Assembly: GCF_006345805.1 (NCBI RefSeq)
Contig: NC_043002.1
Coordinates: 21,452,001-21,516,000 of the forward strand
Reading direction: 5' to 3'
Length of the DNA stretch: 64,000 nucleotides
DNA from: Octopus sinensis
Lineage: Eukaryota
Under the pieces are notes generated by a model. The model was not told the DNA's origin. It worked only from the letters and a program-made list of their open reading frames with translations, and made no database searches. Both the position numbers and the translations under genes were made by a program. Of the stretch, positions 4,076 through 53,224 are shown piece by piece. The stretch's first letter is position 1. Every line of letters begins with the position of its first letter.

Positions 4076-5129
4076 TTTGTATATATCCCTCTCCTCACTG
4101 TTTCACAGCCAGTAATGGTTTGTTTACATCCCTTTAAATTTCTGATTCAGTAAAAAAGGAGATCAACAGTATAACTACTAGCTTAAAAAATAAGTACAGG
4201 GGACCATTTGTTTTATTTCACCCTTCAAGGCAGTGCCCCAGCATGGCTGCTGTTCAATCACTGAGACATGTAAAAGATAAAAGATAAGACAAAAACCTAC
4301 AAAATTAAAAAAAAAAAAATGAGGTATTTTTTAAAAGAAAGAAACTGTAAACATTCTATGAAAGAAAACCAGGAGTATCTTTGTTTACCATTTCAAAAAT
4401 CTGAAGTACATCAAATTTAGAAGTAAAAAGATTGAATGCCTAAAGCAACTTAACAAATGATCATTTTAAAAGAAATCAACTCAGATAGATACATTAGATT
4501 AAAGCTTGGTTTGAATATAAAATTAAAGTGAATGTAACATGAAAGATTACATTAAATAGAATGGAAAATTGTCTTGTAAAAGACTAAGAAGTTTATCCTG
4601 GTAAATTTTTTTTGTATTTTTATTGTCATCATCATCATCATCATCATTTTTTTTTTTTATGGTTGCAAGCTTGCAGAATTGTTAGCATGATGGAGAAGGT
4701 GCTTTGCAGCATTTTGTCTGTCTTTACACTCAGAGTTCAATTTCGACTTCATGTTTCATCCTTTCAGGATCGATGGAATATGTGGTCCCCTGAATTTCAT
4801 GTCTTGTGTCTATAGGCGAAAGGGTTATTATTAGTAGTAGTATTGTTGTTGTTATTGCTAAGGCATCAATCGGGTACACTCATTAATTAGCATGCCAAAC
4901 AAAATGCCATTAAGTATTTTGTCCTTGCATCCTGAGTTCAAATTCCTTCAAGGTCCATTTTGCATTTCATTCTTTTGGGAGTCAATGAAATAAGGACCAG
5001 TTGAGCACTAGGATCAATGTAATTGATTTACCCACTAACTCCACAATTTCAGGCCTTGTGTCTATTATAAAAAGGATTATTATTATTATTATTGTTATAT
5101 AGACAGTTAGCTAGCAGAATTGCTAGAGT

Positions 5130-8430: not shown

Positions 8431-9469
8431 CTCATATGTACACTCATACATAATAGGCTCCCACACTGTTCCATCTACCAAATTCACTCACAGGTTGGCC
8501 TGGGGTTGTAGTAGGAGACACCTATCCAAGGTGCCATACTGTGGGTCTGAACCAAAAGCTAAATCATTGTAAAGCATGCTTCTTATTAGTAATTCTCAGA
8601 ATAGGCAGTTCTGTTCATTGGAAAACTGCAATACTCAGTTTTGAAACTGATGGAGGATCCATTTACTCAGTATATGCATGTGTGTGAGATTGCATTTTAT
8701 GCTCCATGTTTACATGGTTTAGACCAATTCTTATTGTTGAATTAATGTTTTCACATCTCAATGTACTCCTTGGTGCTAATCTTTTTTAAGTGAGGAAGTT
8801 TTTAATTTCACTTATCTTCAAAAATTGTGATTTCTTCACTGGATGGTCTGGAATTGGCAACAGAGAACACCAGCCATACCTCAATGATTATTTTTCATGA
8901 AAATTACTGAATGTAGTTTCACACATGCGCATGCACACACACATACACACACGTATATGTCTGTGTATCTGTCTATTTATGTGTGTGTGAGTGTTTCCAT
9001 GAACTTTGTACAGCTTCCATCTGCTAGATTCACTCAGAAGGCATACATACATACATACATGTGCATGTTTGTGTGCATGCATGCTGAGTTCATTTTGCAG
9101 TTAATATTCACAGTTTTTATGCTTATAAAAACATCCTTGTCCAAAAGGACAGAATCAGAATGAACAAAGGAGCCATGAAATAGTGAGAAAACATCATAAA
9201 AAGTTATGGAAATGGAAACTGCTGTGTATATTAAAGGAATAATTTACAAAAAAATATTATAGAAACTGCACATTTATGGTATAATGACAAATTTCAATGT
9301 GTAATGCTTATTGACATAGCTTCCATAAATGAACTAACCTATAAATTCAGGAAAGCATTAAGCAAAATAAAACTTCACATTACAGTATTTGAAAAGCTAA
9401 GTGGGTCCATTAAATTACAGATAATTAAGATATATCTTTTCCATAAAAGCCATGTATGCCAATAGCAAT

Positions 9470-9799
9470 TGCATAATATGCAAAATGAATCCAAAGATAA
9501 ACTGTAAAACCAGAAATGTTATGCACCCTATGAAATGTATGGAAGGCAAATGCAGGAACACTACCTCAACTCATATGGGAGAAGCTGCCCATAGCATAGC
9601 AGAAAGAATAAATGAATACTAGTGTGAGTATAGAGAAAAGAAACCAACAATGGTACTCTTCTAACATGCAAATGTGAAAATTAACAGCTTGGAATACAGC
9701 AGTGAAGTAAAAATTCTATCAATGCATTCACATGATCACACATTTTGGAAAATACAGGAAACAATACACATATGAGAGACGGTGAATGTACTTAACAGA
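9470..9799 (+). pseudogene. Decayed Penelope-like GIY-YIG endonuclease domain
   Basis: Single frame: CIICKMNPKINCKTRNVMHPMKCMEGKCRNTTSTHMGEAAHSIAERINEY*...VKILSM...WKIQETIHI*ETVNVLNR. This matches the PLE pattern C.T.NVVY...C..C...YIGET.R...R..EH...IL...E.I.I...LN, with 3 in-frame stops. Confidence 0.8.
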
Positions 9800-9955
9800 A
9801 TGTATGTCAAAACTAACAACCACCACAATATTAGTATACTCCCACACTCACACGTGCATACTTACACACATATATATATATATTGGATCCTACTAATAAT
9901 GGTATAGTGCGCTATACACACACATGCATATGTATGTATAAATGAAAATATATAT

Positions 9956-10056
9956 TCTTTTACTGATGAAGTGTGACCTATGGTAGACTAGCTTAATTTA
10001 ATTTAATTAGGCTGGTCTATCATTAAAGACACTGAAACGATGCATCGTATAAAAGA
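9956..10056 (+). ncRNA. Intact type I hammerhead ribozyme with extended stem II
   Basis: Stem I TCTTTTA (9956-62) pairs with TAAAAGA (10050-56). Core CUGAUGA is at 9963-69. Stem II is AGTGT/ACACT plus a 19-bp distal hairpin. GAAAC is at 10034-38, stem III lies in the palindrome ACGATGCATCGT, and the GUA cleavage triplet is at 10047-49. Confidence 0.9.
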
Positions 10057-10187
10057 TGAATTAGGGTAAATGTTTTTAAATTTTCACCTTATTTCCGAAT
10101 TACACTACTTGGCGGTTGGAGTTCTGGCTGCTCTTTCTGGTGGACGAATGGCCTGTTTAGGCCATTCCTAAATTGTTATATATATAC

Positions 10188-10245
<58 letters not shown>

Positions 10246-10368
10246 CAAAATGAATATGTTGTATTGTCTTTTTGATTTTTATTGTGAACCATATATATGC
10301 ATAAATATACATGTGTATATTTATTTATATATACACACACATATATGTAAATACATGTTTATGTATAT

Positions 10369-13300
10369 ATGGTTCGTGATACAAATTTTAGAAGACTACA
10401 ATACATCAAAAAATACAGTACAACAATAGATAATTATATGCATATAATACCTTACATTTTTACAATTGTTTCAAAGCATCAGTATTTTTCATATATGTGT
10501 GTGTGTGTGTGTATGTGTATACATGAATGTGTGTACTATATACACACACATATATGTAAATACATGTTTATGTATATATGGTTCGTGATACAAATTTTAG
10601 AAGACTACAATACATCAAAAAATACAGTACAACAATAGATAATTATATGCATATAATACCTTACATTTTTACAATTGTTTCAAAGCATCAGTATTTTTCA
10701 TATATGTGTGTGTGTGTGTATGTGTATACATGAATGTGTGTACTATATACACACACATATATGTAAATACATGTTTATGTATATATGGTTCGTGATACAA
10801 ATTTTAGAAGACTACAATACATCAAAAAATACAGTACAACAATAGATAATTATATGCATATAATACCTTACATTTTTACAATTGTTTCAAAGCATCAGTA
10901 TTTTTCATATATGTGTGTGTGTGTGTATGTGTATACATGAATGTGTGTACTATATACACACACATATATGTAAATACATGTTTATGTATATATGGTTCGT
11001 GATACAAATTTTAGAAGACTACAATACATCAAAAAATACAGTACAACAATAGATAATTATATGCATATAATACCTTACATTTTTACAATTGTTTCAAAGC
11101 ATCAGTATTTTTCATATATGTGTGTGTGTGTGTATGTGTATACATGAATGTGTGTACTATATACACACACATATATGTAAATACATGTTTATGTATATAT
11201 GGTTCGTGATACAAATTTTAGAAGACTACAATACATCAAAAAATACAGTACAACAATAGATAATTATATGCATATAATACCTTACATTTTTACAATTGTT
11301 TCAAAGCATCAGTATTTTTCATATATGTGTGTGTGTGTGTATGTGTATACATGAATGTGTGTACTATATACACACACACATATATGTAAATACATGTTTA
11401 TGTATATATGGTTCGTGATACAAATTTTAGAAGACTACAATACATCAAAAAATACAGTACAACAATAGATAATTATATGCATATAATACCTTACATTTTT
11501 ACAATTGTTTCAAAGCATCAGTATTTTTCATATATGTGTGTGTGTGTGTATGTGTATACATGAATGTGTGTACTATATACACACACATATATGTAAATAC
11601 ATGTTTATGTATATATGGTTCGTGATACAAATTTTAGAAGACTACAATACATCAAAAAATACAGTACAACAATAGATAATTATATGCATATAATACCTTA
11701 CATTTTTACAATTGTTTCAAAGCATCAGTATTTTTCATATATGTGTGTGTGTGTGTATGTGTATACATGAATGTGTGTACTATATACACACACATATATG
11801 TAAATACATGTTTATGTATATATGGTTCGTGATACAAATTTTAGAAGACTACAATACATCAAAAAATACAGTACAACAATAGATAATTATATGCATATAA
11901 TACCTTACATTTTTACAATTGTTTCAAAGCATCAGTATTTTTCATATATGTGTGTGTGTGTGTATGTGTATACATGAATGTGTGTACTATATACACACAC
12001 ACATATATGTAAATACATGTTTATGTATATATGGTTCGTGATACAAATTTTAGAAGACTACAATACATCAAAAAATACAGTACAACAATAGATAATTATA
12101 TGCATATAATACCTTACATTTTTACAATTGTTTCAAAGCATCAGTATTTTTCATATATGTGTGTGTGTGTGTATGTGTATACATGAATGTGTGTACTATA
12201 TACACACACATATATGTAAATACATGTTTATGTATATATGGTTCGTGATACAAATTTTAGAAGACTACAATACATCAAAAAATACAGTACAACAATAGAT
12301 AATTATATGCATATAATACCTTACATTTTTACAATTGTTTCAAAGCATCAGTATTTTTCATATATGTGTGTGTGTGTGTATGTGTATACATGAATGTGTG
12401 TACTATATACACACACACATATATGTAAATACATGTTTATGTATATATGGTTCGTGATACAAATTTTAGAAGACTACAATACATCAAAAAATACAGTACA
12501 ACAATAGATAATTATATGCATATAATACCTTACATTTTTACAATTGTTTCAAAGCATCAGTATTTTTCATATATGTGTGTGTGTGTGTATGTGTATACAT
12601 GAATGTGTGTACTATATACACACACACATATATGTAAATACATGTTTATGTATATATGGTTCGTGATACAAATTTTAGAAGACTACAATACATCAAAAAA
12701 TACAGTACAACAATAGATAATTATATGCATATAATACCTTACATTTTTACAATTGTTTCAAAGCATCAGTATTTTTCATATATGTGTGTGTGTGTGTATG
12801 TGTATACATGAATGTGTGTACTATATACACACACACATATATGTAAATACATGTTTATGTATATATGGTTCGTGATACAAATTTTAGAAGACTACAATAC
12901 ATCAAAAAATACAGTACAACAATAGATAATTATATGCATATAATACCTTACATTTTTACAATTGTTTCAAAGCATCAGTATTTTTCATATATGTGTGTGT
13001 GTGTGTATGTGTATACATGAATGTGTGTACTATATACACACACATATATGTAAATACATGTTTATGTATATATGGTTCGTGATACAAATTTTAGAAGACT
13101 ACAATACATCAAAAAATACAGTACAACAATAGATAATTATATGCATATAATACCTTACATTTTTACAATTGTTTCAAAGCATCAGTATTTTTCATATATG
13201 TGTGTGTGTGTGTGTGTATGTGTATACATGAATGTGTGTACTATATACACACACACATATATGTAAATACATGTTTATGTATATATGGTTCGTGATACAA

Positions 13301-13406
13301 ATTTTAGAAGACTACAATACATCAAAAAATACAGTACAACAATAGATAATTATATGCATATAATACCTTACATTTTTACAATTGTTTCAAAGCATCAGTA
13401 TTTTTC

Positions 13407-13476
<70 letters not shown>

Positions 13477-13505
13477 ACATGAATGTGTGTACTATATACA
13501 CACAC
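10369..13505. repeat. Tandem satellite, 15 copies of a 207-213-bp unit
   Basis: Unit starts (atggttcgtgat) are at 10369, 10578, 10785, 10992, 11199, 11408, 11615, 11822, 12031, 12238, 12447, 12656, 12865, 13072 and 13285. Units appear to differ only in (TG)n/(CA)n length. Confidence 0.98.
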
Positions 13506-13890
13506 ACACAAGCCTGTATGCACACACAAGCCTGTATGCACACAAGCCTGTACACACACTAGCCCGTACGCAAACACTAGTCCTTGCGCAAACACTAGCC
13601 CGTACACACACACAAGCTCATACACACACACAAGCCCCTACACACACAAGCTCCTACACACACACAAGCCCATACACACACACACAAGCCCGTACACACA
13701 CACAAGCCCCTACACACACAAGCCCCTACACACACACTAGCCCTTGCGCAAACACAAGCCCCTACACACACACAAGCCCGTACACACACACAAGCCTGTA
13801 TGCACACACAAGCCTGTATGCACACAAGCCTGTACACACACTAGCCCTTGCGCAAACACTAGCCCTTGCGCAAACACAAGCCCCTACACA
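13500..13890. repeat. Minisatellite (ca)n-agccc(g/c)ta, ~16-22-bp units
   Basis: Repeated cacacacaagcccgta / cacactagccc variants abut the end of the satellite. Confidence 0.9.
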
Positions 13891-14091
13891 CACACACACA
13901 TGCACATGCAATGCATTTATACATGCACATGCATTGCACACACACAGACAATGGGGTGCATGATGTCTGTCTGTGTTGTTGTGGTGGTGGTGTTGGGGAT
14001 GGTGGTGTTCGACTGTGGGGAATTAGGCTTATAATGGATTCAACAACTGTTTGGTCACTAAAATATCTTTGCAGTTAGCACTGTGTCACAC

Positions 14092-23179: not shown

Positions 23180-23790
23180 CACTCAAGCCCAGTCACGCTG
23201 AAGCCCAGCCATGCTGAAGCCCAGTCTCCCTCAAGCCCAGTCTCACTCAAGCCCAGTCACCCTCAAGCCCAGTCACCCTCAAGCCCAGTCACCCTCAAGC
23301 CCAGTCTCCCTCAAGCCCAGTCACCCTCAAGCCCAGTCACCCTCAAGCCCAGTCTCCCTCAAGCCCAGTCTCCCTCAAGCCCAGTCTCCCTCAAGCCCAG
23401 TCTCCCTCAAGCCCAGTCTCCCTCAAGCCCAGTCACCCACAAGCCCAGTCACCCTCAAGCCCAGTCACCCTCAAGCCCAGTCTCCCTCAAGCCCAGTCAC
23501 CCTCAAGCCCAGTCTCCCTCAAGCCCAGTCTCCCTCAAGCCCAGTCTCCCTCAAGCCCAGTCACCCTCAAGCCCAGTCACCCTCAAGCCAGTCACCCTCA
23601 AGCCCATTTTCCCTCAAGCCCAATTTTCCCTCAAGCCCAGTCTCCCTCAAGCCCAGTCTCCCTCAAGCCCAGTCACCCTCATGCCCAGTCACCCTCAAGC
23701 CCAGTCTCCCTCAAGCCCAGTCTCCCTCAAGCCCAGTCACCCTCAAGCCCAGTCACCCTCAAGCCCAGTCACGCTCAAGCCTGTCATTCT
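23180..23790. repeat. 16-bp minisatellite ctcaagcccagtc(a/t)cc, ~38 copies
   Basis: Direct reading. The 16-aa periodic ORF (3 x 16 nt) confirms the unit length. Confidence 0.97.
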
Positions 23791-28780: not shown

Positions 28781-29346
28781 CTAGGTCTGACGAATAAGTA
28801 TTGAGGACTGGTGCTGTGAAAAGAAAACTACAACACATATCAATTGGGCATTTAATCTCCTTTGAAATGGTCCCTTTCTAAAGCCACACACTTTCTCCAA
28901 CATCGTTTCCATTGATGGAAACATTCCTGGAACTCCTATTTTGGGATAGCAGGCAGCTGCTTCATCACATTCTCTTGGTTATCCTCAATAACTTGAAATT
29001 TTGTTGGGGTCTTCGACTGCAAAAACTGAATCTCAGTTTCAAGGTCATAGCCACAAACCTACGATTTGTCACCAGCTACAACCATTTTCAAAATGTTTTT
29101 GTCTTTCTCGGCACAATCAAAGAGCTCCTGTGTAGCTGAAACCCAATCTTCTTTTTAGAAAGACTACACTCTACACACTTTGCTTCCAAGCACTTCTCTA
29201 AGCAACAGAAGTGAATGAGAATGATATAACTTATGTTTGTGCATGCGTGACAGTTTTCAAGGTCAATCTGTGCCTAACGGCTTCACTCTACACACTTTAG
29301 CTCTGTTACCATAGCAGCAGTCCTGATGCTTTTTGACCAAACCTCA
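28781..29346 (-). mobile_element. Internally deleted Mariner element
   Basis: Imperfect ~35-bp TIRs flanked by TA (28779-80, 29347-48). The minus strand encodes EDNQENVMKQLPAIPK*EFQECFHQWKRCWRKCVALERDHFKGD*, a mariner transposase C-terminus. Confidence 0.85.
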
Positions 29347-30972: not shown

Positions 30973-31695
30973 ATCATCATCATCGTTTAACGTCCGCTTT
31001 CCATGCTAGCATGGGTTGGACGGTTCAACTGGGGTCTGGCAAGCCCGAAGGCTACACCAGGCCAGTCAGATCTGGCAGTGTTTCTACAGCTGGATGCCCT
31101 TCCTAACGCCAACCACTCCGAGAGTGTAGTGGGTGATTTTATGTGCCACCGACACAGGTGCCAGACGAGGCTGGCAGACGGCCACGCTCGGATGGTGTTT
31201 TTTATGTGCCACCGACACAGGTGCCAGACGAGGCTGGCAGACGGCCACGCTTGGATATGGTGTTTTCGGTGTTTTTCTTATGTGCCACCGACACAGGTGC
31301 CAGATGAGGCTGGCAAACGGCTACGATCGGATGGTGTTTGTTACATGCCCACGGCACGGAGGCCAGTCGATGCGGTACTGGCTACGGCCCCGTTCGGATG
31401 GTTTTCTTATGTGCCACTGGCACTGGTACCACAGGGATACAAATTCCATTGATGTTCATCTATTTTGATTTGGTTTGACTTGATTCGATTTGACTTTGAT
31501 TTGATTTGCCTCAACAGGTCTTCACAAGTGTCACAAGCAGGAAGGTATGCACAGGTGGACTGACTACATCACAGGTAGGGGCCACGGGTTATGGCTTCAC
31601 TAGTCTTGCCGGGTCTTCTCACGCACAGCATACTTCCATAGGTCTCGGTCTCTAGTCATCTCCATGGTGAGACCTAACGTTCGAAGGTCGTATAT
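30973..31695 (-). mobile_element. RTE-type LINE 3' end including the ORF2 C-terminus
   Basis: Minus strand 31689-31600 encodes DLRTLGLTMEMTRDRDLWKYAVREKTRQD*, an RTE-like C-terminus with DR..W, followed by the family A 3' UTR and a (GAT)n tail. Confidence 0.8.
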
Positions 31696-35840: not shown

Positions 35841-36541
35841 GAAAAAGTACTAGGGTCAATTCGTTTGACTAAAATTCTTCAGCATGGCTGTGATCTTATG
35901 ACTGAAACAAGTAAAAGATAAAAGACAAAAATAATCAAGAATTTTGAAGATCTTAGTAAAATAATCAACTTTGGTGCTTGGACCATAATGTAACAAAAAG
36001 GTTTTTTGACATAAAATTGTCTCATGAGGTTTTAATTTTTACGTTAACATTTTAAAACTGAAGATGTTTATGTTGGAACCAGAAGTATTCTTAGATTGGA
36101 TGGTATATCAGAGGAATTAATAAAAATTAATTTATAATTTCTGCTGAAATAATTAACCACCTTCTAATGATTTCTGCTATTTTGGCAGAAGACCACACAT
36201 TTCTAAGAATGGAACTGAATTGATCCCCAATCAATGATTCTTTCTAATTTCCCCAATCACTGAGTGAAACTTTTGATGCTTTGAATCAAAGCTACTTATA
36301 ACAGCTAAACTTTCATGCAGTTTAACAAGCATGCATTTGTAAACTTAAATGAGCAGTGATGTCTACAGGTGCAGGTTCAATACCACAATGTGGCACCTTG
36401 GGCAAGTATTATTTGCTGTAGCATTGGGCTTGTGATTTGGTAGGGAGACTGACAGAAGCTTATTGTATGCATATGTGTGTGTGTGTATATATATATATAT
36501 TATATATATATATATATTATATATATATATATATATAGCAA

Positions 36542-36947
36542 GTGAAAATCCAAAATCAAAATCAAAATCGATCAACATCAATGGAAATTGCAGCTGTGAT
36601 ACCAGTGCCGGTGGTACATAAGAGAGCCATCCGAATGTGGCCATTGCCAGTGCCGCCCCAACGGGCCTCGTGCCAGTGGCACGTAAAAAGCACCATCCAA
36701 TTGTGGCCATTGCCAGCCTCGCCTGGCCCCCGTACCGGTGGCATGTAAAAAGCACCATCTGATCGTGGCCGTTTGCCAGCCTCGTCTGGCACCTGTGCCG
36801 GTGGCACGTAAAAAGCACCCACTACTCTCACGGAGTGGTTGGCGTTAGGAAGGGCATCCAGCCGTAGAAACATTGCCAGATCAGACTTGAACCATCCAAC
36901 CCATGCTAGCATGGAAAGCGGACGCTAAACGAAGATGACGATGATGA
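36542..36947 (+). mobile_element. RTE-type LINE 3' end (family A)
   Basis: Long family A 3' UTR with aaaagcaccat subrepeats and a gatgac/gatgat tail. Confidence 0.85.
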
Positions 36948-40062: not shown

Positions 40063-40851
40063 ATGTCTTTACCCATGTAAGATGTTGTTAACTGTTTGGT
40101 GGGATAAGAAAGGTTTAGTCCACTTTGAACTTTTAAACCCAAACCAAACGATAACAAAAGAGATGTACTGTGAGCAGCTTGAGTGGTTTGGTGTTCAAAT
40201 TTCTCTATTGAATGTAATACTTTTTCACTCAAATTGTTTTGAATTAATCATGCATTATGTTATAGCTTTGAGGTTTCAATGATGTGATTGTTTATTTTTA
40301 GAATGTCACTGTAGGTTAGGTGTGAGAGGCTAGATATGGCCAGTTTGAATATAAAACATGTAGAATACTTGGGCCGGATATGGCTGGTTTAAACACTAAA
40401 GGGTTAAGTCAGCGCTAGAAGAAAAACGACTATCTTTGGTTTCAAGACGAAAGGTGCTCTTTCATCAGGATAATGCTTAGCCACATACAGCGAGGGTGAC
40501 ATTCCAAAGGCTGGAGCAGTTTGAATGGGAAATGATGCCGCACCCACCATATTCGCTGGACATTGCCCCATCTGATTATCATTTATGCTGCCGTCTTCAA
40601 AATCATTTGAACAGAAAAAATGTAAATTCTGTAGATGGGGTCAGAACAATACTGGAGGAGTATTTTTTGTCATGGACAAGTGAATTTTGGAAGAGGGGCC
40701 TTGCTAGCCTACCAGATAGATGGAAGAACATTGTAGAAAATGAAGGAGAGTATATTTCAGAGTATAAAGAACTTTGTTTATCTTAATTTTGAAAAAGTAT
40801 TAAAAAAAGTATTAAAAAAAAAACAACACATTATTATAAGATGACTCAATA
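40063..40851 (+). pseudogene. Mariner transposase C-terminal half, interrupted, with right TIR
   Basis: LLTVWWDKKGLVHFELLNPNQTITKEMYCEQLE | LKSALEEK...LFHQDNA*PHTA...HPPYSLDIAPSDYHL...RWKNIVENEGEYI. TIR-like ttataagatgactcaata is at ~40833-40851. Confidence 0.92.
40193..40407. mobile_element. piggyBac-like MITE fragment inserted into the Mariner ORF
   Basis: Ends in aaagggTTAA, like the 1093-1317 and 57277-57507 elements. The Mariner homology resumes immediately after it. Confidence 0.7.
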
Positions 40852-44672: not shown

Positions 44673-44779
44673 TCTGTTGGCTTTAGGCCTCTCAAGTGAG
44701 TGGCCTTTCTGGAATATGGAGGTAGATAGGACCTTGCTACTTGATGTCAACAACAGGGGGTTATCTCCCTTTTGTTATC

Positions 44780-45135
44780 GGTCACAAGAGACCCTGTTAT
44801 CTTGTGGGTTCCAATAGGCCTGCAGAAATTTCCTGAAATGCAAGCACAGTCTGAAGACCTCCATCCTGGAGTTAAGGATGTTCCCCGGGTTGAGGGAGTC
44901 CTTTAGAATCCTTGCCCATTCCACTATGCATAGTTTACAATGTTTGGTCCTGTTTATGTAGGGGCCTGGATTTTCTAGGATTCTCCATGCTGTTGTGTAT
45001 GGAATCCCGTCATCTTTCAGCTGCCATACATTGTTGGCTAGTGACATAATGTATCTCCTTTCTGGTATCCTGAAAGAGGATCTGTGGTTAGAGAGGCATT
45101 GTTTGAATGTGTTACTAGAGCAACTGATGTATCCT
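44780..45135 (-). pseudogene. Penelope-like GIY-YIG endonuclease C-terminus
   Basis: Minus frame: GYISCSSNTFKQCLSNHRSSF...SLANNVWQLKD...WRILE..GPY....KHCKLCIVE..RIL...NILNSRME...CLHFRKF, a typical PLE C-terminal pattern. Confidence 0.85.
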
Positions 45136-46467: not shown

Positions 46468-47917
46468 ATATATAGGTATAGGTTGGATTGATACTTACCT
46501 GTGGTTGTGTTTTTACGGCTAGATTATCTTCCTGTTGCCAACTCTTACTTGTTTTATGAGCAAGAAAGTTTCTATTCAACTACATTGAAAGTGTAGAGCT
46601 ACAGGATGTAATGTTCCATTCCTGTGAATGTAAACATGATTACTCTGTTTACACTCGCGGATGATCTCATGCAGGAAACAGAAACAACAACTTTATCACA
46701 AACACAAGAATAATATGCCTATACACATAAGAAGTGTGTGTTGCCATTAAGTTGTTACACAACCTGCTAAAAATAGCAGCTAACTCACTCTGTTATCATA
46801 CTTTTGCATCTTAAAAAAAGGAAGGACATACTAGGACTGGATAATATTGTCTGGAACAGACTATATCTAGGGAAAAAAATAAGATTGCCTTAGATGAATC
46901 ATTCTTGACATAAGTCTCCTCCTTTTGAGCCTGACTCAGAGCTAAACGAAAATAATTAATCAAGAGTTTGATATGTCATATCGTCTCATGTGTCTAGTTG
47001 CATCAATGGAGCAGGATTCTTAATTCTCAAATAGCCCAGCCTATCTAGCTGAAAATAAGAAGATAGAAACAATATCACAGAACAATATGACAGACAGTTA
47101 GTCAACTTGCAGTTGATTCAACACAACATCGTCTGCAGATTTTGTGAAGCCTTTCTTGTCCTGTAATCAATGGGTTTCCTGGTCAGTTTTACTATTCTAT
47201 TCAGTCTGGTTCTGATCAAATACTGATATCTATATATATATATATGTGTGTATGTATATGTGTATGCTTGTGTCTACCTTTATCTTGACATCATATATTG
47301 ATTGTAAATAATCATCGCTGTCATACAAATGATACCGTTCGTTTCCAGTCTTTTGTGAAAAACATGTCAGGCTGTGGGTATACATATCACCTTGCCTGGA
47401 AAGAATGTGAAGGTTGGTGACAAGGAGGGTGCCTGGTAGTAGAAAATCTGCCTCAATGAATTCTGTCATGCAAGCATAGAAAGGTGGACATTAAAATGAT
47501 GATGATGTCAGACAGCTGGTGTGTGTGTGTGTGTGTGTGTGTTTTGACACCAGCACTTCCATGGTTGATCAGCTAAAGAATTTGTTTCACAATCATGAGA
47601 TTCCTGGCTTAGTTTCACTACAGGCATCTTGGGTCTTTTGGCTAAACCTTGGGTTGATTGAAGCTTTGATCATGAAAGTCAGTTGATGGAAACTGCAGAA
47701 ACCTGTTGGATGGATTCTACTTGTTATTCACTGTTCAACTTTGTCAAACATTGTCACATTGATTCTGTTTGTAGATCATATTAGGGGTATGAGTATTAGT
47801 TGAGTACTTAGCCACACCATGATGTAATGAATAGGGAGTTCCATGCACCAAAGAACTAGAATACCAGAATACACATCATCACAACCAATAGAGAAAAAGA
47901 GTGTGTGTGTGTATATA

Positions 47918-48160
47918 TCATCATCATCATTGTTTAACGTCCGTTCTCCATGCTAGCATGGGTTGGACGGTTCGACTGGGATCTGGGAAGCTAGAAGGTT
48001 GCACCAGGCTCCAATTTGATCTGGCAGTGTTTCTACAGCTGGATGCCCTTCCTAACGCCAACCACTCTGTGAGTGTAGTGGGTGCTTTTTATGTGCCACC
48101 AGCACAGGTGCCAGGCGAGGCTGGCAACAGCCACGATTGGATTGGTGCTTTTTACGGGCC
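47918..48160 (-). mobile_element. RTE-type LINE 3' end (family A)
   Basis: Conserved family A sequence. Confidence 0.85.
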
Positions 48161-48859
48161 ATATATATATATATATATATATCAAATACATTTTTGTATG
48201 TGTGTATATACCTGATCATAGAAAATCTACTTCAACAAATTTTATCTGACCCATACAAACATAACATAGAAAAGTGGATGTTACCAGGATCTCTAGTGGC
48301 GTGAGGTTCTCAAAAAGACTTGCCCTCCTGAGTTCTGGAAGTGCTATGTTTTGGCTACTCCACCCATCACAGTAACTTTTCACCCTGCACCATGTCTACC
48401 TGTTTCCCCTCCCCAACAACTGTATCATCTTTCATACTTCAGCTGCTCATTTCCTCTCCATTCTTCAGCATCCCTCTGTCATCCCCAACTCATGGCTCTT
48501 GTCTTGTCCTCCCTTTAACCCTACCCATTTTGGCAATCTTTTTCTCCATCCCTCATTCACCTTCCCATAAAACCTTACAGATCCACTTCTGCTCATCATA
48601 TGCCTTGTGGGGCCACCCGAGCACCCTATTACCATTATCTATGTCTTGCAGCTCCTACTGACCATTTTCTCTTCTGCTGCCCTTCCTTTGTTTTCCATGC
48701 TAGATGTGAATAGCCATGCAGATCCCTCTGCAACAACCTGCTCTGCACCCACCTCTCTCATAATAAACCCCTCATCTCCTAGCATGAAGCTGATCTCTTC
48801 CACCTACCCCAGGCCTTGTAGTTCTGCAAACTGCATAGCAACCTCAATAGTGCAGGTGG

Positions 48860-51759: not shown

Positions 51760-52210
51760 TCCATTTTAAATGTGTGTGTATTCCTCTATATATATATGTG
51801 TGTATGTGTGTATTCCTCTATATATGTGTGTGTATTCCTCTATATGTGTGTGTGTGTGTGTGTATTCCTCTATATATATATATGTGTGTGTGTGTGTGTA
51901 TTCCTCTATATGTGTGTGTGTGTGTGTGTATTCCCCTCATCATCATCATCATCGTCGTTTAACGTCCGTTCTCCATGCTAGCATGGGTTGGACGGTTCGA
52001 CCGGGGTTCTGGGAAGCCAGAAGGCTGCACCAGGCTCCAGTCTAATCTGGCAATGTTTCTACAGCTGGATGCCCTTCCTAACGCCAACCACTCCGTGAGT
52101 GTAGTGGGTGCTTTTTACGTGCCAGTGTGTGTGTGTGTGTATTCCTCTATATATGTGTGTGTGTGTGTATTCCTCTATATATATGTGTGTGTGTGTATTC
52201 CTATGTATAT
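51760..52210. repeat. (TG)n-tattcctc-(TA)n compound minisatellite split by a family A insertion (51937-52125, minus)
   Basis: The same unit occurs on both sides of the insertion. Confidence 0.9.
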
Positions 52211-53224
52211 ATTCCTCTGTATGTGGAGACGGGTGTCTGCTTCACCCTTTCTCTTTCTCTCTGTGTGTTTGACTGTCTGTCTGTCCCTTCTGTGTGTATG
52301 TATCTCTTTCTCTATCACAATGTATGACATATATGTATATGTGTGTGTGTGTGTCTCGAGGCACACCTCTTTCTGTTCCAATGTATGTTTGTTCTTTGTT
52401 CTTTTGTATTGTTTGTGTTGTGTGTGTGAGTGTGTGAGTCTCTTTCTTCACCTCTCTCCTGCATCTTAGCATATATATATATATATGTGTGTGTATGTAT
52501 ATGCGTGAACATTTTCCTCCGTTTCTCTCTTCCTCTTTCTCTCATTTTCTTATGATGGGGGATGGAAGCAGTTGAAGATAGATGGTTTCTTTCTCAGGTG
52601 TGAATGCATCTCTTATGGTCCTCTCGAAAACCCATCACTGGTTGGATGCTGCTGCTCCACAGATCAGTGAAGTGGTACAGACGCACAAATTTATTTTAGG
52701 TTGGTTTGAATGCTTATTTTCAGCTCTTGAGTTCAAATGGTGATGAGGCATCAACTCCACTTTTAAAATTTTTTCGCATTCAATTGATTATATGGCCATT
52801 TTTCAGTTTGGCATCATCATGATTGTCCTTGTTATTATCACTTCCATTCTTGCCATCATGATAATCATCGTCATTTTTATGTACTTATCCATCTCATCAT
52901 TGCAATCATCATCATTCTGTCCATCATTCTTCTTCTCCTTACCATCTTCATTTCAACATCTATTTTTCCATGATGTCGTGTGGGTTGGATGGGTCTGCAG
53001 TACTATATATTATTATTATTACTATTTGTCTTGTTCTTGTATCAACATCATGAGATCTAGTCTTGTCTGTTTTTTTTTCTGCATGTCTTCATTGGTCTTT
53101 CTCTTTCATGTTTATCTTCTTTTGTCAGCATCAACGTTTTCCCATCCCACCCCCAATATCGATTCCCATCCCATCTCCGTAAGCAGCACATTTGTCTCTC
53201 TTGTGTACATCAGGTGATGCTTTT

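What the first reader, a model, noticed from the sequence alone, without database searches (positions are those of the whole stretch)
9956..10056. Apparently intact hammerhead ribozyme with a very long stem II and a 12-nt palindromic stem III
Every catalytic-core position matches consensus: CUGAUGA, GAAA, and GUA with predicted cleavage 3' of 10049. Stem I is a perfect 7 bp. Stem II is 5 bp, a 5x5 internal loop, then 19 bp (9980-9998 with 10005-10023) whose three non-Watson-Crick pairs are all G-U on the plus strand. Stem III can fold in cis (4 bp plus a UGCA loop) or pair between molecules through ACGAUGCAUCGU. This is the best candidate for a functional RNA in the window.
Basis: partly seen in the sequence, partly recalled or inferred. 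Interest (0 to 1): 0.9.

Follow-up and report, generated by a model that had tools for sequence, protein, structure and literature searches.

The report
Hammerhead ribozyme beside dead octopus retrotransposon
The sequence is a structurally intact self-cleaving hammerhead RNA motif sitting just downstream of a decayed Penelope-like retrotransposon in an octopus genome, a known kind of association, so it is a believable but fairly ordinary find with some unusual structural details.

Summary
Window 9956-10056 (+) carries CUGAUGA, GAAA and GUA in hammerhead order, framed by a 7-bp helix I, a helix II of 5 bp, a 5x5 loop and 19 bp, and a 12-nt palindromic helix III. Two points were missed. The conserved 10.1-11.1 pair is A-U, not G-C. 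The predicted lowest-energy monomer fold pairs the core UGAUG with CAUCG of helix III; the hammerhead fold is 1 kcal/mol higher, and the dimer restores it.

Rfam finds no hammerhead here, but it also misses a similar motif in Octopus vulgaris DNA.

The window is octopus DNA. At 9142-9775, on the same strand, lies a decayed remnant (5 premature stops, 1 frameshift) of the C-terminal GIY-YIG endonuclease part of a Penelope-like element (PLE) protein. The ribozyme starts 180 nt after its stop codon and is flanked by (TA)n. This is where PLE hammerheads are known to sit.

Palindromic-helix-III hammerhead motifs are about 200-fold enriched over null in sampled octopus DNA.

Verdict: a new member of the PLE-associated type I hammerheads. 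It is either younger than the neighbouring ORF remnant or has been selectively preserved. Cleavage activity is untested. No close copies could be retrieved.

The parts
9956..9962 (+). Helix I, 5' strand (UCUUUUA); pairs with 10050-10056
   Evidence: sequence; descriptor: 7 bp
9963..9969 (+). Core C3-A9, CUGAUGA
9970..9974 (+). Proximal helix II, 5' strand (AGUGU); pairs with 10029-10033; the 10.1-11.1 pair is A9970-U10033, not the usual G-C
   Evidence: PMC3088659 for the conservation of G10.1-C11.1
9975..10028 (+). Helix II extension: 5x5 internal loop (9975-9979 / 10024-10028) and 19-bp distal hairpin (9980-9998 / 10005-10023, three G-U pairs, loop 9999-10004)
   Evidence: the three G-U pairs would be A-C mismatches on the minus strand, which folds 13 kcal/mol worse
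10029..10033 (+). Proximal helix II, 3' strand (ACACU)
10034..10037 (+). Core G12 A13 A14 A15.1 (GAAA)
10037..10048 (+). Helix III: palindrome ACGAUGCAUCGU. In cis it gives 4 bp plus a UGCA loop. In trans it gives a 12-bp intermolecular helix. Its 3' half CAUCG can instead pair with core UGAUG (inactive conformer).
   Evidence: dimer MFE -87.7 against 2 x -36.5 kcal/mol
10049..10050 (+). Predicted scissile bond, 3' of A10049 (H17) within the triplet GUA
   Evidence: inference from hammerhead numbering applied; not tested
10050..10056 (+). Helix I, 3' strand (UAAAAGA)
10057..10172 (+). Unique 3' tail of the hammerhead-bearing island, with two predicted hairpins (the terminal one is GAAUGGCCU/AGGCCAUUC around 10147-10168); ends at a (TA)n/(CA)n microsatellite
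   Evidence: 296-nt region z = -6.2
9142..9775 (+). Decayed remnant of the C-terminal part (linker plus GIY-YIG endonuclease) of a Penelope-like element ORF. It has two frames (9142-9450, 9467-9775), 5 premature stops and at least 1 frameshift. Catalytic Y, Y and H residues are replaced.
   Evidence: tblastn with P0010, E about 1e-29; translations; family has Y-x-DD, GIY-YIG, Cys linker and CCHH motifs
9849..9955 (.). CA/TA microsatellite-like stretch (with one short unique hairpin at 9884-9912) between the ORF remnant and the hammerhead; ends in (TA)n directly at 9955
10173..10244 (.). (TA)n then (AC)22 microsatellite flanking the island on its 3' side

Best explanation
This is a type I hammerhead ribozyme of the Penelope-like-element (PLE) class, in an octopus genome.

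It belongs to the 3' region of a 5'-truncated PLE insertion in a (TA)n/(CA)n microsatellite. There are two possibilities. It may be the 3' UTR of the decayed copy whose endonuclease remnant lies at 9142-9775. More likely, it is a later, very short PLE-derived insertion (9956-10172) next to that older copy.

Proposed mechanism, inferred and not shown. When transcribed on the plus strand, helices I, II and III enclose the CUGAUGA/GAAA core. The 2'-OH of A10049 attacks its 3' phosphate, giving a 2',3'-cyclic phosphate on A10049 and a 5'-OH on U10050. The monomer is predicted to sit mostly in an inactive hairpin in which the core pairs with the 3' half of helix III. Pairing of two copies through the 12-nt palindrome restores the active fold. 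Cleavage is therefore expected to be favoured in multimeric or abundant transcripts, as described for other PLE and newt-type hammerheads. Its role would be processing of retroelement RNA, not a host function.
For: Shown by the sequence:
- All invariant core nucleotides, A15.1-U16.1, H17 = A and three helices are present.
- The motif is the only strict hit in the window, with 0 strict hits in 300 shuffles.
- Strand asymmetry favours the plus strand: -36.5 against -23.1 kcal/mol.
- The dimer MFE is the double hammerhead with a 12-bp helix III: -87.7 against -73.0 kcal/mol for two monomers.

Context:
- The window is octopus DNA.
- 9142-9775 (+) matches the O. bimaculoides protein P0010 (XP_052825841.1) over aa 63-273, E = 1.8e-29.
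- P0010 is the C-terminal 276 aa of longer proteins such as P0105 (E = 5e-72).
- The family has an invariant Y-x-DD, GIY...YIG...R...H...N, a CxCxxC linker and CCHH-like residues.
- Pfam GIY-YIG hits 4 of 10 relatives, one above the curated cutoff.
- The only PDB hits of the family profile are reverse transcriptases, E = 0.006.
- PLE terminal repeats always contain type I hammerheads with a palindromic helix III. PLEs insert next to older copies and into (TA)n.
- O. vulgaris carries PLEs as a major TE order (PMC13282606).

Independent enrichment:
- In 142.6 kb of O. vulgaris DNA fetched for unrelated reasons, a second motif of the same architecture was found at L004, around 4597-4664 on the minus strand. 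It has a palindromic helix III (ACUGAUCAGU), a helix II with a 6x6 internal loop and (TA)n flanks.
- The null expectation is 0.005 per 206 kb, from Markov shuffles and from 750 decoy cores on the real DNA.

Intactness:
- Five stops in 633 nt imply a divergence of about 0.2. A hammerhead of that age would be fully intact with P about 1e-4.
- The best joint probability at any single neutral age is about 6e-4.
Against: - No Rfam hammerhead model matches, even at E <= 10 on 124-601 nt. The L004 motif is missed too, so this negative result discriminates little.
- The 10.1-11.1 pair is A-U instead of the highly conserved G-C.
- There is no recognisable loop-loop tertiary contact. A possible loop II to 3' tail pairing is not significant.
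- The monomer MFE sequesters the core.
- Only one copy is in the window, so there is no tandem partner for dimerisation in cis.
- No homologous copy of this particular hammerhead was retrieved, so there is no covariation evidence.
- The 3' UTRs of three related PLE copies (L001, L009, L012) have no intact hammerhead, and their resemblance to this one is borderline at best.
- The RT assignment of the protein family rests on motifs and weak PDB hits. Pfam RVT_1 is silent.
- PLE hammerheads cleave poorly in vitro even as dimers.
Confidence: 0.66

Rival explanations
1. It descends from a real PLE hammerhead but is a catalytically dead relic. The A10.1-U11.1 pair, the lack of tertiary contacts, the competing hairpin fold and the absence of a partner copy together prevent meaningful cleavage. 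Its intact look would reflect a recent insertion, not function.
For: - A-U occupies the most conserved helix II pair.
- The MFE is an alternative fold, with helix III probability 0.12-0.16.
- The motif is single-copy.
- PLE hammerheads are weak in vitro even as dimers.
- The island is flanked by (TA)n on both sides, like a separate insertion.
Against: - The hammerhead fold lies only 1 kcal/mol above the MFE, and the dimer favours it by about 15 kcal/mol.
- A 4-bp helix III with a tetraloop is more stable than the 1-2 bp typical of dimer-only hammerheads.
- Two other octopus motifs (L002) also carry A10.1-U11.1, with changes between the copies that keep helices I and II paired. This suggests the variant pair is tolerated in this lineage.
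Confidence: 0.22
2. The selected or relevant structure is the long imperfect hairpin (a foldback DNA element, a pre-miRNA-like precursor or a dsRNA editing substrate), and the hammerhead reading is incidental.
For: - The MFE is one long hairpin of 7 + 5 + 5 + 19 bp.
- Weak sub-threshold Rfam matches are all to miRNA hairpin families.
- The L002 octopus element carrying hammerhead-like motifs is itself a large palindrome.
Against: - A hairpin does not explain CUGAUGA, GAAA and UH at exactly the junction positions. Decoy cores on the same real DNA give 0.005 hits where the true core gives 2.
- The miRNA matches score 11-22 bits against gathering scores of 50-102.
- The PLE context predicts a hammerhead, not a miRNA.
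- A 19-bp stem with a 6-nt loop and a 5x5 internal loop is a poor Drosha/Dicer substrate (established knowledge; inference).
Confidence: 0.06
3. It is a chance match to the hammerhead consensus in AT-rich, hairpin-rich DNA.
For: My extrapolation (0.077 loose hits per window, times about 0.38 for each of 7 extra base pairs) gives roughly 4e-5 to 9e-5 strict hits per 64-kb window. That is about 1-4 per 2.7-Gb genome if every window were scanned. Helix I is AU-rich and low in complexity.
Against: - 0 strict hits in 300 shuffles.
- A perfect 12-nt palindromic helix III was not required by that estimate.
- The motif lies 180 nt downstream of a PLE ORF remnant, on the same strand and in (TA)n.
- An independent second motif of the same architecture occurs in only 142.6 kb of octopus DNA.
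Confidence: 0.04

Closest known systems
Hammerhead ribozymes of Penelope-like elements (min-HHR and 'atypical' PLE variants; Cervera & de la Pena 2014, PMC4209133; Lunse, Weinberg & Breaker 2017, cited in PMC6765202)
   Same: - Type I topology.
- Location in the 3'/terminal-repeat region of a PLE on the coding strand.
- Insertion in (TA)n.
- Palindromic helix III that allows an extended intermolecular helix.
- Larger-than-usual helix II.
- No recognisable loop 1 / loop 2 contact.
   Different: - Helix III is 4 bp plus a tetraloop (a 12-nt palindrome), not 0-2 bp.
- Helix I is 7 bp, not 2-5 bp.
- There is no extra nucleotide between A9 and 10.1.
- The 10.1-11.1 pair is A-U, whereas G-C is reported as highly conserved in PLE hammerheads.
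- Helix II carries a 5x5 internal loop and a 19-bp extension, against 6-8 bp.
- No second copy is nearby.
Canonical metazoan type I hammerheads of non-LTR retrozymes and satellite repeats (newt satellite 2, Schistosoma Sm-alpha, mussel, coral, axolotl; PMC7229834)
   Same: Type I topology, a palindromic helix III loop, low-GC repeat context, and dimer-dependent activity in some members.
   Different: - Those sit in 150-450-bp tandem arrays, one ribozyme per unit. Here there is a single copy, and the adjacent 207-bp satellite (10328-13432) has no hammerhead core.
- Canonical members have a 6-bp helix I and a 4-bp helix II with conserved interacting loops. These were not seen here.
Rfam Hammerhead_1 (RF00163) and the other Rfam hammerhead families
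   Same: The same conserved core and three-helix junction.
   Different: No match at the gathering score or at E <= 10. The long helix II insertion and the A-U closing pair probably cost too many bits, which is an inference.
Octopus vulgaris motifs found here: L004 around 4597-4664 (-) and the inverted pair at L002 16105-16247
   Same: - L004 has a palindromic helix III (ACUGAUCAGU), a helix II built as a short proximal stem, a symmetric internal loop and a distal stem, and (TA)n flanks.
- Helix I minus proximal helix II equals 2 bp in both L004 and the window motif.
- All share the same predicted core / helix III alternative pairing.
- L002 has A10.1-U11.1 like the window motif.
   Different: - There is no sequence homology outside the motif.
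- L004 has G10.1-C11.1 and the extra A after A9, and lies in a 285-bp unit with 39-bp inverted termini.
- The L002 motifs have a 4-bp helix I.
- None has a 19-bp extension.

Membership tests
Hammerhead ribozyme (class) | Core strand C3 U4 G5 A6 N7 G8 A9 | tested here: met
   CUGAUGA at 9963-9969
Hammerhead ribozyme (class) | Core strand G12 A13 A14 followed by the A15.1-U16.1 pair, and H17 (not G) at the cleavage site | tested here: met
   GAAA at 10034-10037; A10037-U10048; A10049
Hammerhead ribozyme (class) | Three helices radiating from the core in the right order (type I: helix I open) | tested here: met
   Descriptor hit with 7 bp, 5 bp and 4 bp. The hammerhead structure evaluates to -35.5 kcal/mol.
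Hammerhead ribozyme (class) | G10.1-C11.1 closing pair of helix II (highly conserved, not strictly invariant) | tested here: not met
   A9970-U10033; conservation stated in PMC3088659 and PMC4209133
Hammerhead ribozyme (class) | Tertiary contact between helix I and helix II elements (loop-loop or pseudoknot) needed for fast cleavage at physiological Mg2+ | tested here: inconclusive
   ACCU 9976-9979 could pair with GGGU 10064-10067. The L004 motif has an analogous pairing after the same 7-nt spacer. Neither beats shuffles (P = 0.18 and 0.24).
Hammerhead ribozyme (class) | Score at or above the Rfam gathering threshold for a hammerhead covariance model | tested here: not met
   No hammerhead hit at the gathering score or at E <= 10. 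The L004 motif is also missed.
Hammerhead ribozyme (class) | Site-specific self-cleavage giving 2',3'-cyclic phosphate and 5'-OH ends | not testable with these tools
   Needs an in vitro transcription and cleavage assay or end-specific RNA sequencing
Hammerhead ribozyme (class) | Covariation in the helices across homologues | not testable with these tools
   No homologous copy was retrievable. No eukaryotic genome collection can be searched by DNA. The metagenome scan gave one chance hit.
PLE-associated hammerhead | Lies in the terminal/3' region of a Penelope-like element, on the same strand as the RT-EN ORF | tested here: met
   The ORF remnant 9142-9775 (+) ends 180 nt upstream. [quoted passage not shown] Caveat: the hammerhead island may be a separate adjacent insertion.
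PLE-associated hammerhead | Palindromic helix III / loop 3 permitting dimer formation | tested here: met
   ACGAUGCAUCGU is a perfect palindrome. The dimer MFE forms a 12-bp helix III.
PLE-associated hammerhead | Unpaired nucleotide between A9 and 10.1; short helix I (2-5 bp); helix II of 6-8 bp | tested here: not met
   No extra nucleotide; helix I is 7 bp; helix II is 5 bp + loop + 19 bp; features as listed in PMC4209133
PLE-associated hammerhead | A second copy in tandem (flanking pseudo-LTRs) within a few kb | tested here: not met
   Self-BLAST and the descriptor find no second copy in the 64 kb
PLE-associated hammerhead | Insertion into (TA)n microsatellite | tested here: met
   (TA)n abuts both 9955 and 10173; the bias is described in PMC8557442
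Non-LTR retrozyme | Tandem repeats of 150-450 bp, each unit carrying one type I hammerhead | tested here: not met
   The motif is single-copy. The neighbouring 207-bp x 15 satellite contains no CUGANGA.

The most novel reading that the evidence does not exclude
The hammerhead has been kept by selection long after its parent retroelement decayed. On this reading it is an exapted octopus RNA element. It would work as a conformational switch: the monomer folds into a core-sequestering hairpin, and the dimer or an assisted fold cleaves. Its perfect 19-bp arm would serve as a double-stranded RNA handle, for example for the editing or small-RNA machinery.
Probability: 0.07. Interest if true: 0.65.

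Novelty: new member of a known kind. Interest (0 to 1): 0.36.

Why it matters
If it is active, it extends the PLE-associated hammerheads to cephalopods. The papers I could search do not describe them there. The 2026 O. vulgaris repeat annotation mentions no ribozymes, and two full-text searches found no cephalopod hammerhead.

It also shows a variant design: a stable palindromic helix III, an A-U closing pair, and a helix II with an internal loop and a long double-stranded arm. Current Rfam models do not detect this design. That is a practical warning for ribozyme annotation in large invertebrate genomes.

The contrast between a heavily decayed ORF and an unbroken ribozyme next to it could be used to ask whether such ribozymes are maintained for trans-mobilisation or for host use.

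Otherwise this is an expected by-product of retrotransposon biology.

Tried and rejected
- **Rfam cmscan.** Run on the whole window at gathering score, and on 601-nt and 124-nt sub-regions at E <= 10. No hammerhead was found, only sub-threshold miRNA-like hairpin hits. The same search misses the L004 octopus motif, so I do not read the negative as evidence against.
- **Other copies in the window.** None found. The weak descriptor hit at 28787 (4/3/3 bp) is at chance level.
- **Link to the 207-bp satellite at 10328-13432.** No sequence relation and no hammerhead core in the unit.
- **Exact look-ups of three window ORFs in the contig collection.** Nothing on record.
- **Homology between the candidate's 3' tail and the L004 element.** By eye it looked real (ATTTTCAC, GGAGAATGGC), but the local alignment score of 12 is reached by 18% of shuffles and by 18% of real octopus segments. 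Rejected.
- **Metagenome scan** with CTGATGA N{40,70} GAAACGATGCATCGTA. One hit (L008), lying in what looks by eye like a transposase-type coding sequence (not checked against a profile library), with no helices I or II. About one chance hit was expected.
- **ORF 44778-45134 (-).** It looked like a GIY-YIG domain by eye. Pfam, the word-indexed protein search, tblastn with PLE proteins and BLASTP against L005 were all negative.
- **Hammerheads in the 3' UTRs of related PLE copies (L001, L009-L011, L012).** None is intact. L012 10945 GAAAGGATGCATTTAC resembles the candidate's GAAACGATGCATCGTA, but only at P about 0.06-0.1.
- **Loop II to 3' tail pseudoknot.** Not significant.
- **Terminal inverted repeats around the candidate island.** Only TA-repeat matches were found.
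- **Pfam RVT_1 on long family members.** No hit. The RT assignment rests on motifs and weak PDB matches.

Full report
**Observation**

- Helix I: UCUUUUA with UAAAAGA, 7 bp.
- Core strand: CUGAUGA, 9963-9969.
- Helix II: AGUGU/ACACU (5 bp), then a 5x5 internal loop (GACCU/UAAAG), then a 19-bp distal helix with three G-U pairs and a UAAUUU loop.
- Core strand: GAAA, 10034-10037.
- Helix III: ACGAUGCAUCGU, which gives 4 bp plus a UGCA loop in cis and is a perfect 12-nt palindrome.
- Cleavage triplet: GUA, with H17 = A10049.

A type I hammerhead descriptor that I wrote finds this as the only strict hit on either strand of the window. It gave no strict hit in 300 Markov shuffles, and 0.077 hits per window at a far looser setting. 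The plus strand folds to -36.5 kcal/mol (z = -6.7). The minus strand folds only to -23.1, because the three G-U pairs become A-C mismatches.

First, the helix II closing pair 10.1-11.1 is A9970-U10033. In natural hammerheads this is G-C. It is described as the most conserved pair after 15.1-16.1 (PMC3088659) and as highly conserved in PLE hammerheads (PMC4209133).

Second, the predicted MFE of the monomer is not the hammerhead.
- Core UGAUG (9964-9968) pairs with CAUCG (10043-10047), giving one long hairpin.
- The hammerhead fold is 1 kcal/mol higher (-35.5).
- Helix III pairs have probability 0.12-0.16, against 0.6-0.8 for the alternative.
- For two molecules, the MFE is the double hammerhead joined by a 12-bp helix III: -87.7 against 2 x -36.5 kcal/mol.

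**Rfam**

No hammerhead family matches at the gathering score, or at E <= 10 on 601 nt or 124 nt. The only hits are weak matches to miRNA hairpin families, far below threshold. I do not weigh this heavily. A second octopus motif with G10.1-C11.1 (L004, see below) is also invisible to Rfam.

**Where the window comes from**

A repeated SINE-like ORF (31003-31452) hits only Octopus vulgaris and O. bimaculoides proteins. The window is non-coding, about 38% GC, and full of (TA)n/(CA)n microsatellites. The motif is single-copy in the window. A 207-bp satellite (15 units, 99% identical) starts 270 bp downstream, but it is unrelated and lacks any CUGANGA.

**Context: a dead Penelope-like element immediately upstream**

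Six-frame inspection showed a motif at 9425-9619 (+) of the form C..C...C..RNV....C....C.....H.GE...SIAE..NE. It matches an ORF in O. vulgaris locus L001 with E = 1e-20. An exhaustive profile search then found 79 relatives. The closest is the O. bimaculoides protein XP_052825841.1 (P0010, 277 aa).

P0010 aligns to the window in two frames, combined E = 1.8e-29:
- aa 63-171 with 9142-9450;
- aa 177-273 with 9467-9757.

The frame ends at a stop codon at 9773-9775. The remnant has five premature stops and at least one frameshift. The GIY tyrosine, the YIG tyrosine and the catalytic-region histidine are replaced.

P0010 is the C-terminal 276 residues of longer proteins such as P0105 (E = 5e-72). 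A 10-member alignment of that family shows these invariant features:
- Y-x-DD;
- the GIY...YIG...R...H...N pattern;
- a CxCxxC linker;
- two Cys and two His placed like the CCHH motif of PLE endonucleases.

Pfam GIY-YIG hits 4 of 10 relatives, one above the curated cutoff. The only PDB hits of the family profile are two reverse transcriptases (E = 0.006). Pfam RVT_1 is silent. A reverse transcriptase followed by a C-terminal GIY-YIG nuclease with these zinc-finger-like motifs is the architecture that defines endonuclease-positive Penelope-like elements (PMC8557442). The RT part of this assignment is the weakest link.

**Why that context matters**

- PLE terminal repeats are reported always to contain hammerheads. 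These are mostly type I, have a palindromic helix III and are thought to act as dimers. PLEs also tend to insert into or beside older PLE copies (PMC4209133; PMC6765202).
- Several PLE clades insert preferentially into (TA)n and leave inverted 5'-truncated copies (PMC8557442).
- O. vulgaris carries PLEs as one of its TE orders, with an expansion at a Jukes-Cantor distance of about 0.2 (PMC13282606).

The candidate begins 180 nt after the stop codon of the remnant, on the same strand. The unique island 9956-10172 is bounded on both sides by (TA)n.

**Independent evidence that octopus genomes carry such motifs**

I fetched seven 20-kb O. vulgaris loci for an unrelated reason: they carry the SINE-derived proteins. 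In those 142.6 kb the descriptor found the following.

L004, around 4597-4664 on the minus strand: CCAUG CUGAUGA A GGC [6x6 loop, 5-bp stem, UUGC] GCC GAAA CUGAUCAGU A CAUGG. Helix III is a perfect 10-nt palindrome. The extra A after A9 is typical of PLE hammerheads. The pair G10.1-C11.1 is present. Helix II is built like the candidate's: a proximal stem, a symmetric internal loop and a distal stem. The motif sits in a 285-bp unit with 39-bp inverted termini flanked by (TA)n.

L002 16105-16247: an inverted head-to-head pair of motifs, each with A10.1-U11.1 like the candidate. Between the two copies there is one compensatory U-A to C-G change in helix I, and two changes to G-U in helix II. The pair is again flanked by (TA)n.

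I then required a perfect even palindrome of at least 8 nt from 15.1 to 16.1. The true core gives 2 hits in 206 kb (the window plus L004). The null gives 0.005 from Markov shuffles and 0.0053 from 750 decoy cores scanned on the same real DNA, where 747 decoys gave zero. The L004 hit was not preselected, so the class is roughly 200-fold enriched.

All three octopus motifs share a predicted alternative pairing of the core with the 3' half of helix III.

**Age argument**

Simulating substitutions on the intact homologous ORF of L012 shows that five stops in 633 nt correspond to a divergence of about 0.2. P(at least 5 stops) is 0.013 at d = 0.05. The chance that the 101-nt hammerhead keeps its whole core and every pair is 0.045 at d = 0.05, 0.0024 at d = 0.1 and 1e-4 at d = 0.2. 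The best joint probability at any single neutral age is about 6e-4.

So there are three readings:
- the hammerhead island is a younger insertion next to an old copy, which fits PLE behaviour and the (TA)n on both sides;
- the ORF was already dead in a non-autonomous master copy;
- the ribozyme has been under selection.

I cannot separate these here. I favour the first.

**Mechanism**

Inferred, not shown. A plus-strand transcript forms the three-way junction. The 2'-OH of A10049 attacks the adjacent phosphate, leaving a 2',3'-cyclic phosphate on A10049 and a 5'-OH on U10050. The monomer would be largely trapped in the core-sequestering hairpin. Dimerisation through the palindrome, or a cellular factor, would release the core. 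The biological role would be processing of PLE or PLE-derived transcripts.

**What I could not do**

No tool here searches a eukaryotic genome by DNA, so I found no homologue of this particular hammerhead and have no covariation evidence.
- The metagenome scan gave one chance hit.
- The 3' UTRs of three related PLE copies (L001, L009, L012) have no intact hammerhead. Their similarity to the candidate is borderline at best.
- Apparent similarity of the candidate's tail to the L004 element is not significant.
- A possible loop II to 3' tail pseudoknot is not significant either. It is ACCU 9976-9979 with GGGU 10064-10067, and has an analogue in L004 after the same 7-nt spacer.

**Verdict**

This is a genuine, structurally unbroken hammerhead motif of the PLE-associated type I kind: a new member of a known class.
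- Unusual traits: A10.1-U11.1, a stable 12-nt palindromic helix III, a 7-bp helix I, and a helix II with an internal loop plus a 19-bp arm.
- Probability that it descends from a real hammerhead: about 0.9.
- Probability that it still cleaves detectably: about 0.65.
- Interest: modest.

Noticed in passing
window 10328-13432: A 207-bp satellite, about 15 head-to-tail units at 99% identity (also read as a 416-bp period), starts 270 bp downstream of the hammerhead. It has no hammerhead core and no similarity to the hammerhead island.
   Followed up: partly
window 9142-9775 (+): A pseudogenised C-terminal part of a Penelope-like element ORF (linker plus GIY-YIG endonuclease), with 5 premature stops and 1 frameshift. 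The closest relative is O. bimaculoides XP_052825841.1, which is annotated as 'uncharacterized protein' but is itself a 5'-truncated PLE ORF.
   Followed up: yes
L004 4450-4735 (- strand), O. vulgaris OX597840.1: A 285-bp unit with perfect 39-bp inverted termini (CCAATTAAGGACTGAACACGAAAAGTGGACAGTCAACAT), flanked by (TA)n, carries a well-formed type I hammerhead motif with a 10-nt palindromic helix III. It is either a MITE-like element carrying a ribozyme or a PLE-style insertion with an inverted truncated copy.
   Followed up: partly
L002 16080-16275, O. vulgaris OX597839.1: An approximately 200-bp near-palindromic element flanked by (TA)n. Each arm contains a hammerhead-like motif with A10.1-U11.1. 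The two arms differ by a compensatory U-A to C-G change in helix I.
   Followed up: partly
window 9963-10048; L004 and L002 motifs: In all three octopus motifs the 5' half of the helix III palindrome mimics the core (CGAUG, CUGAU, CUAU against CUGAUG). The predicted MFE therefore pairs the core with the 3' half of helix III. This may be a built-in 'off' conformer released by dimerisation.
   Followed up: partly
window 31003-31452, 36366-36924 (-), 47892-48212, 51963-52466 and others: Many copies of an octopus SINE-like repeat translate to ...MLAWVGRF...DLAVFLQLDALPNANHS... Several copies of it are annotated as 'Hypothetical predicted protein' in O. vulgaris.
   Followed up: partly
window 44778-45134 (-): A 119-codon open frame (…YISCSSNTFKQCLSNHRSSF…CKLCIVEW…LNSRMEVFRLCLHFRKF) looked like a nuclease or zinc-finger remnant by eye. 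It has no match in Pfam, in the word-indexed protein search, or to the PLE proteins.
   Followed up: partly
window 40481-40783 (+): An open frame ending ...PHPPYSLDIAPSDYHLCCRLQNHL... resembles the C-terminus of mariner-type transposases by eye, but Pfam gives no hit at E <= 0.01.
   Followed up: partly
L003 7027-7103, O. vulgaris OX597839.1: A near-perfect palindromic hairpin reaches the Rfam gathering score for mir-9/mir-79 on both strands (62.4 and 61.9 bits against 58.6).
   Followed up: no
L005 8193-8296 (- strand): CUGAUGA and GAAA flank a very long helix (13 bp plus 11 bp) with G10.1-C11.1, but helix I is only 4 bp and helix III only 1 bp, non-palindromic. It may be a degenerate hammerhead or a chance match.
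   Followed up: no
window 23182-23781 and 13500-13945: There is a 16-bp minisatellite (37 copies, 93% matches), plus 18/34/104-bp CA-rich arrays. These are ordinary octopus low-complexity DNA.
   Followed up: no
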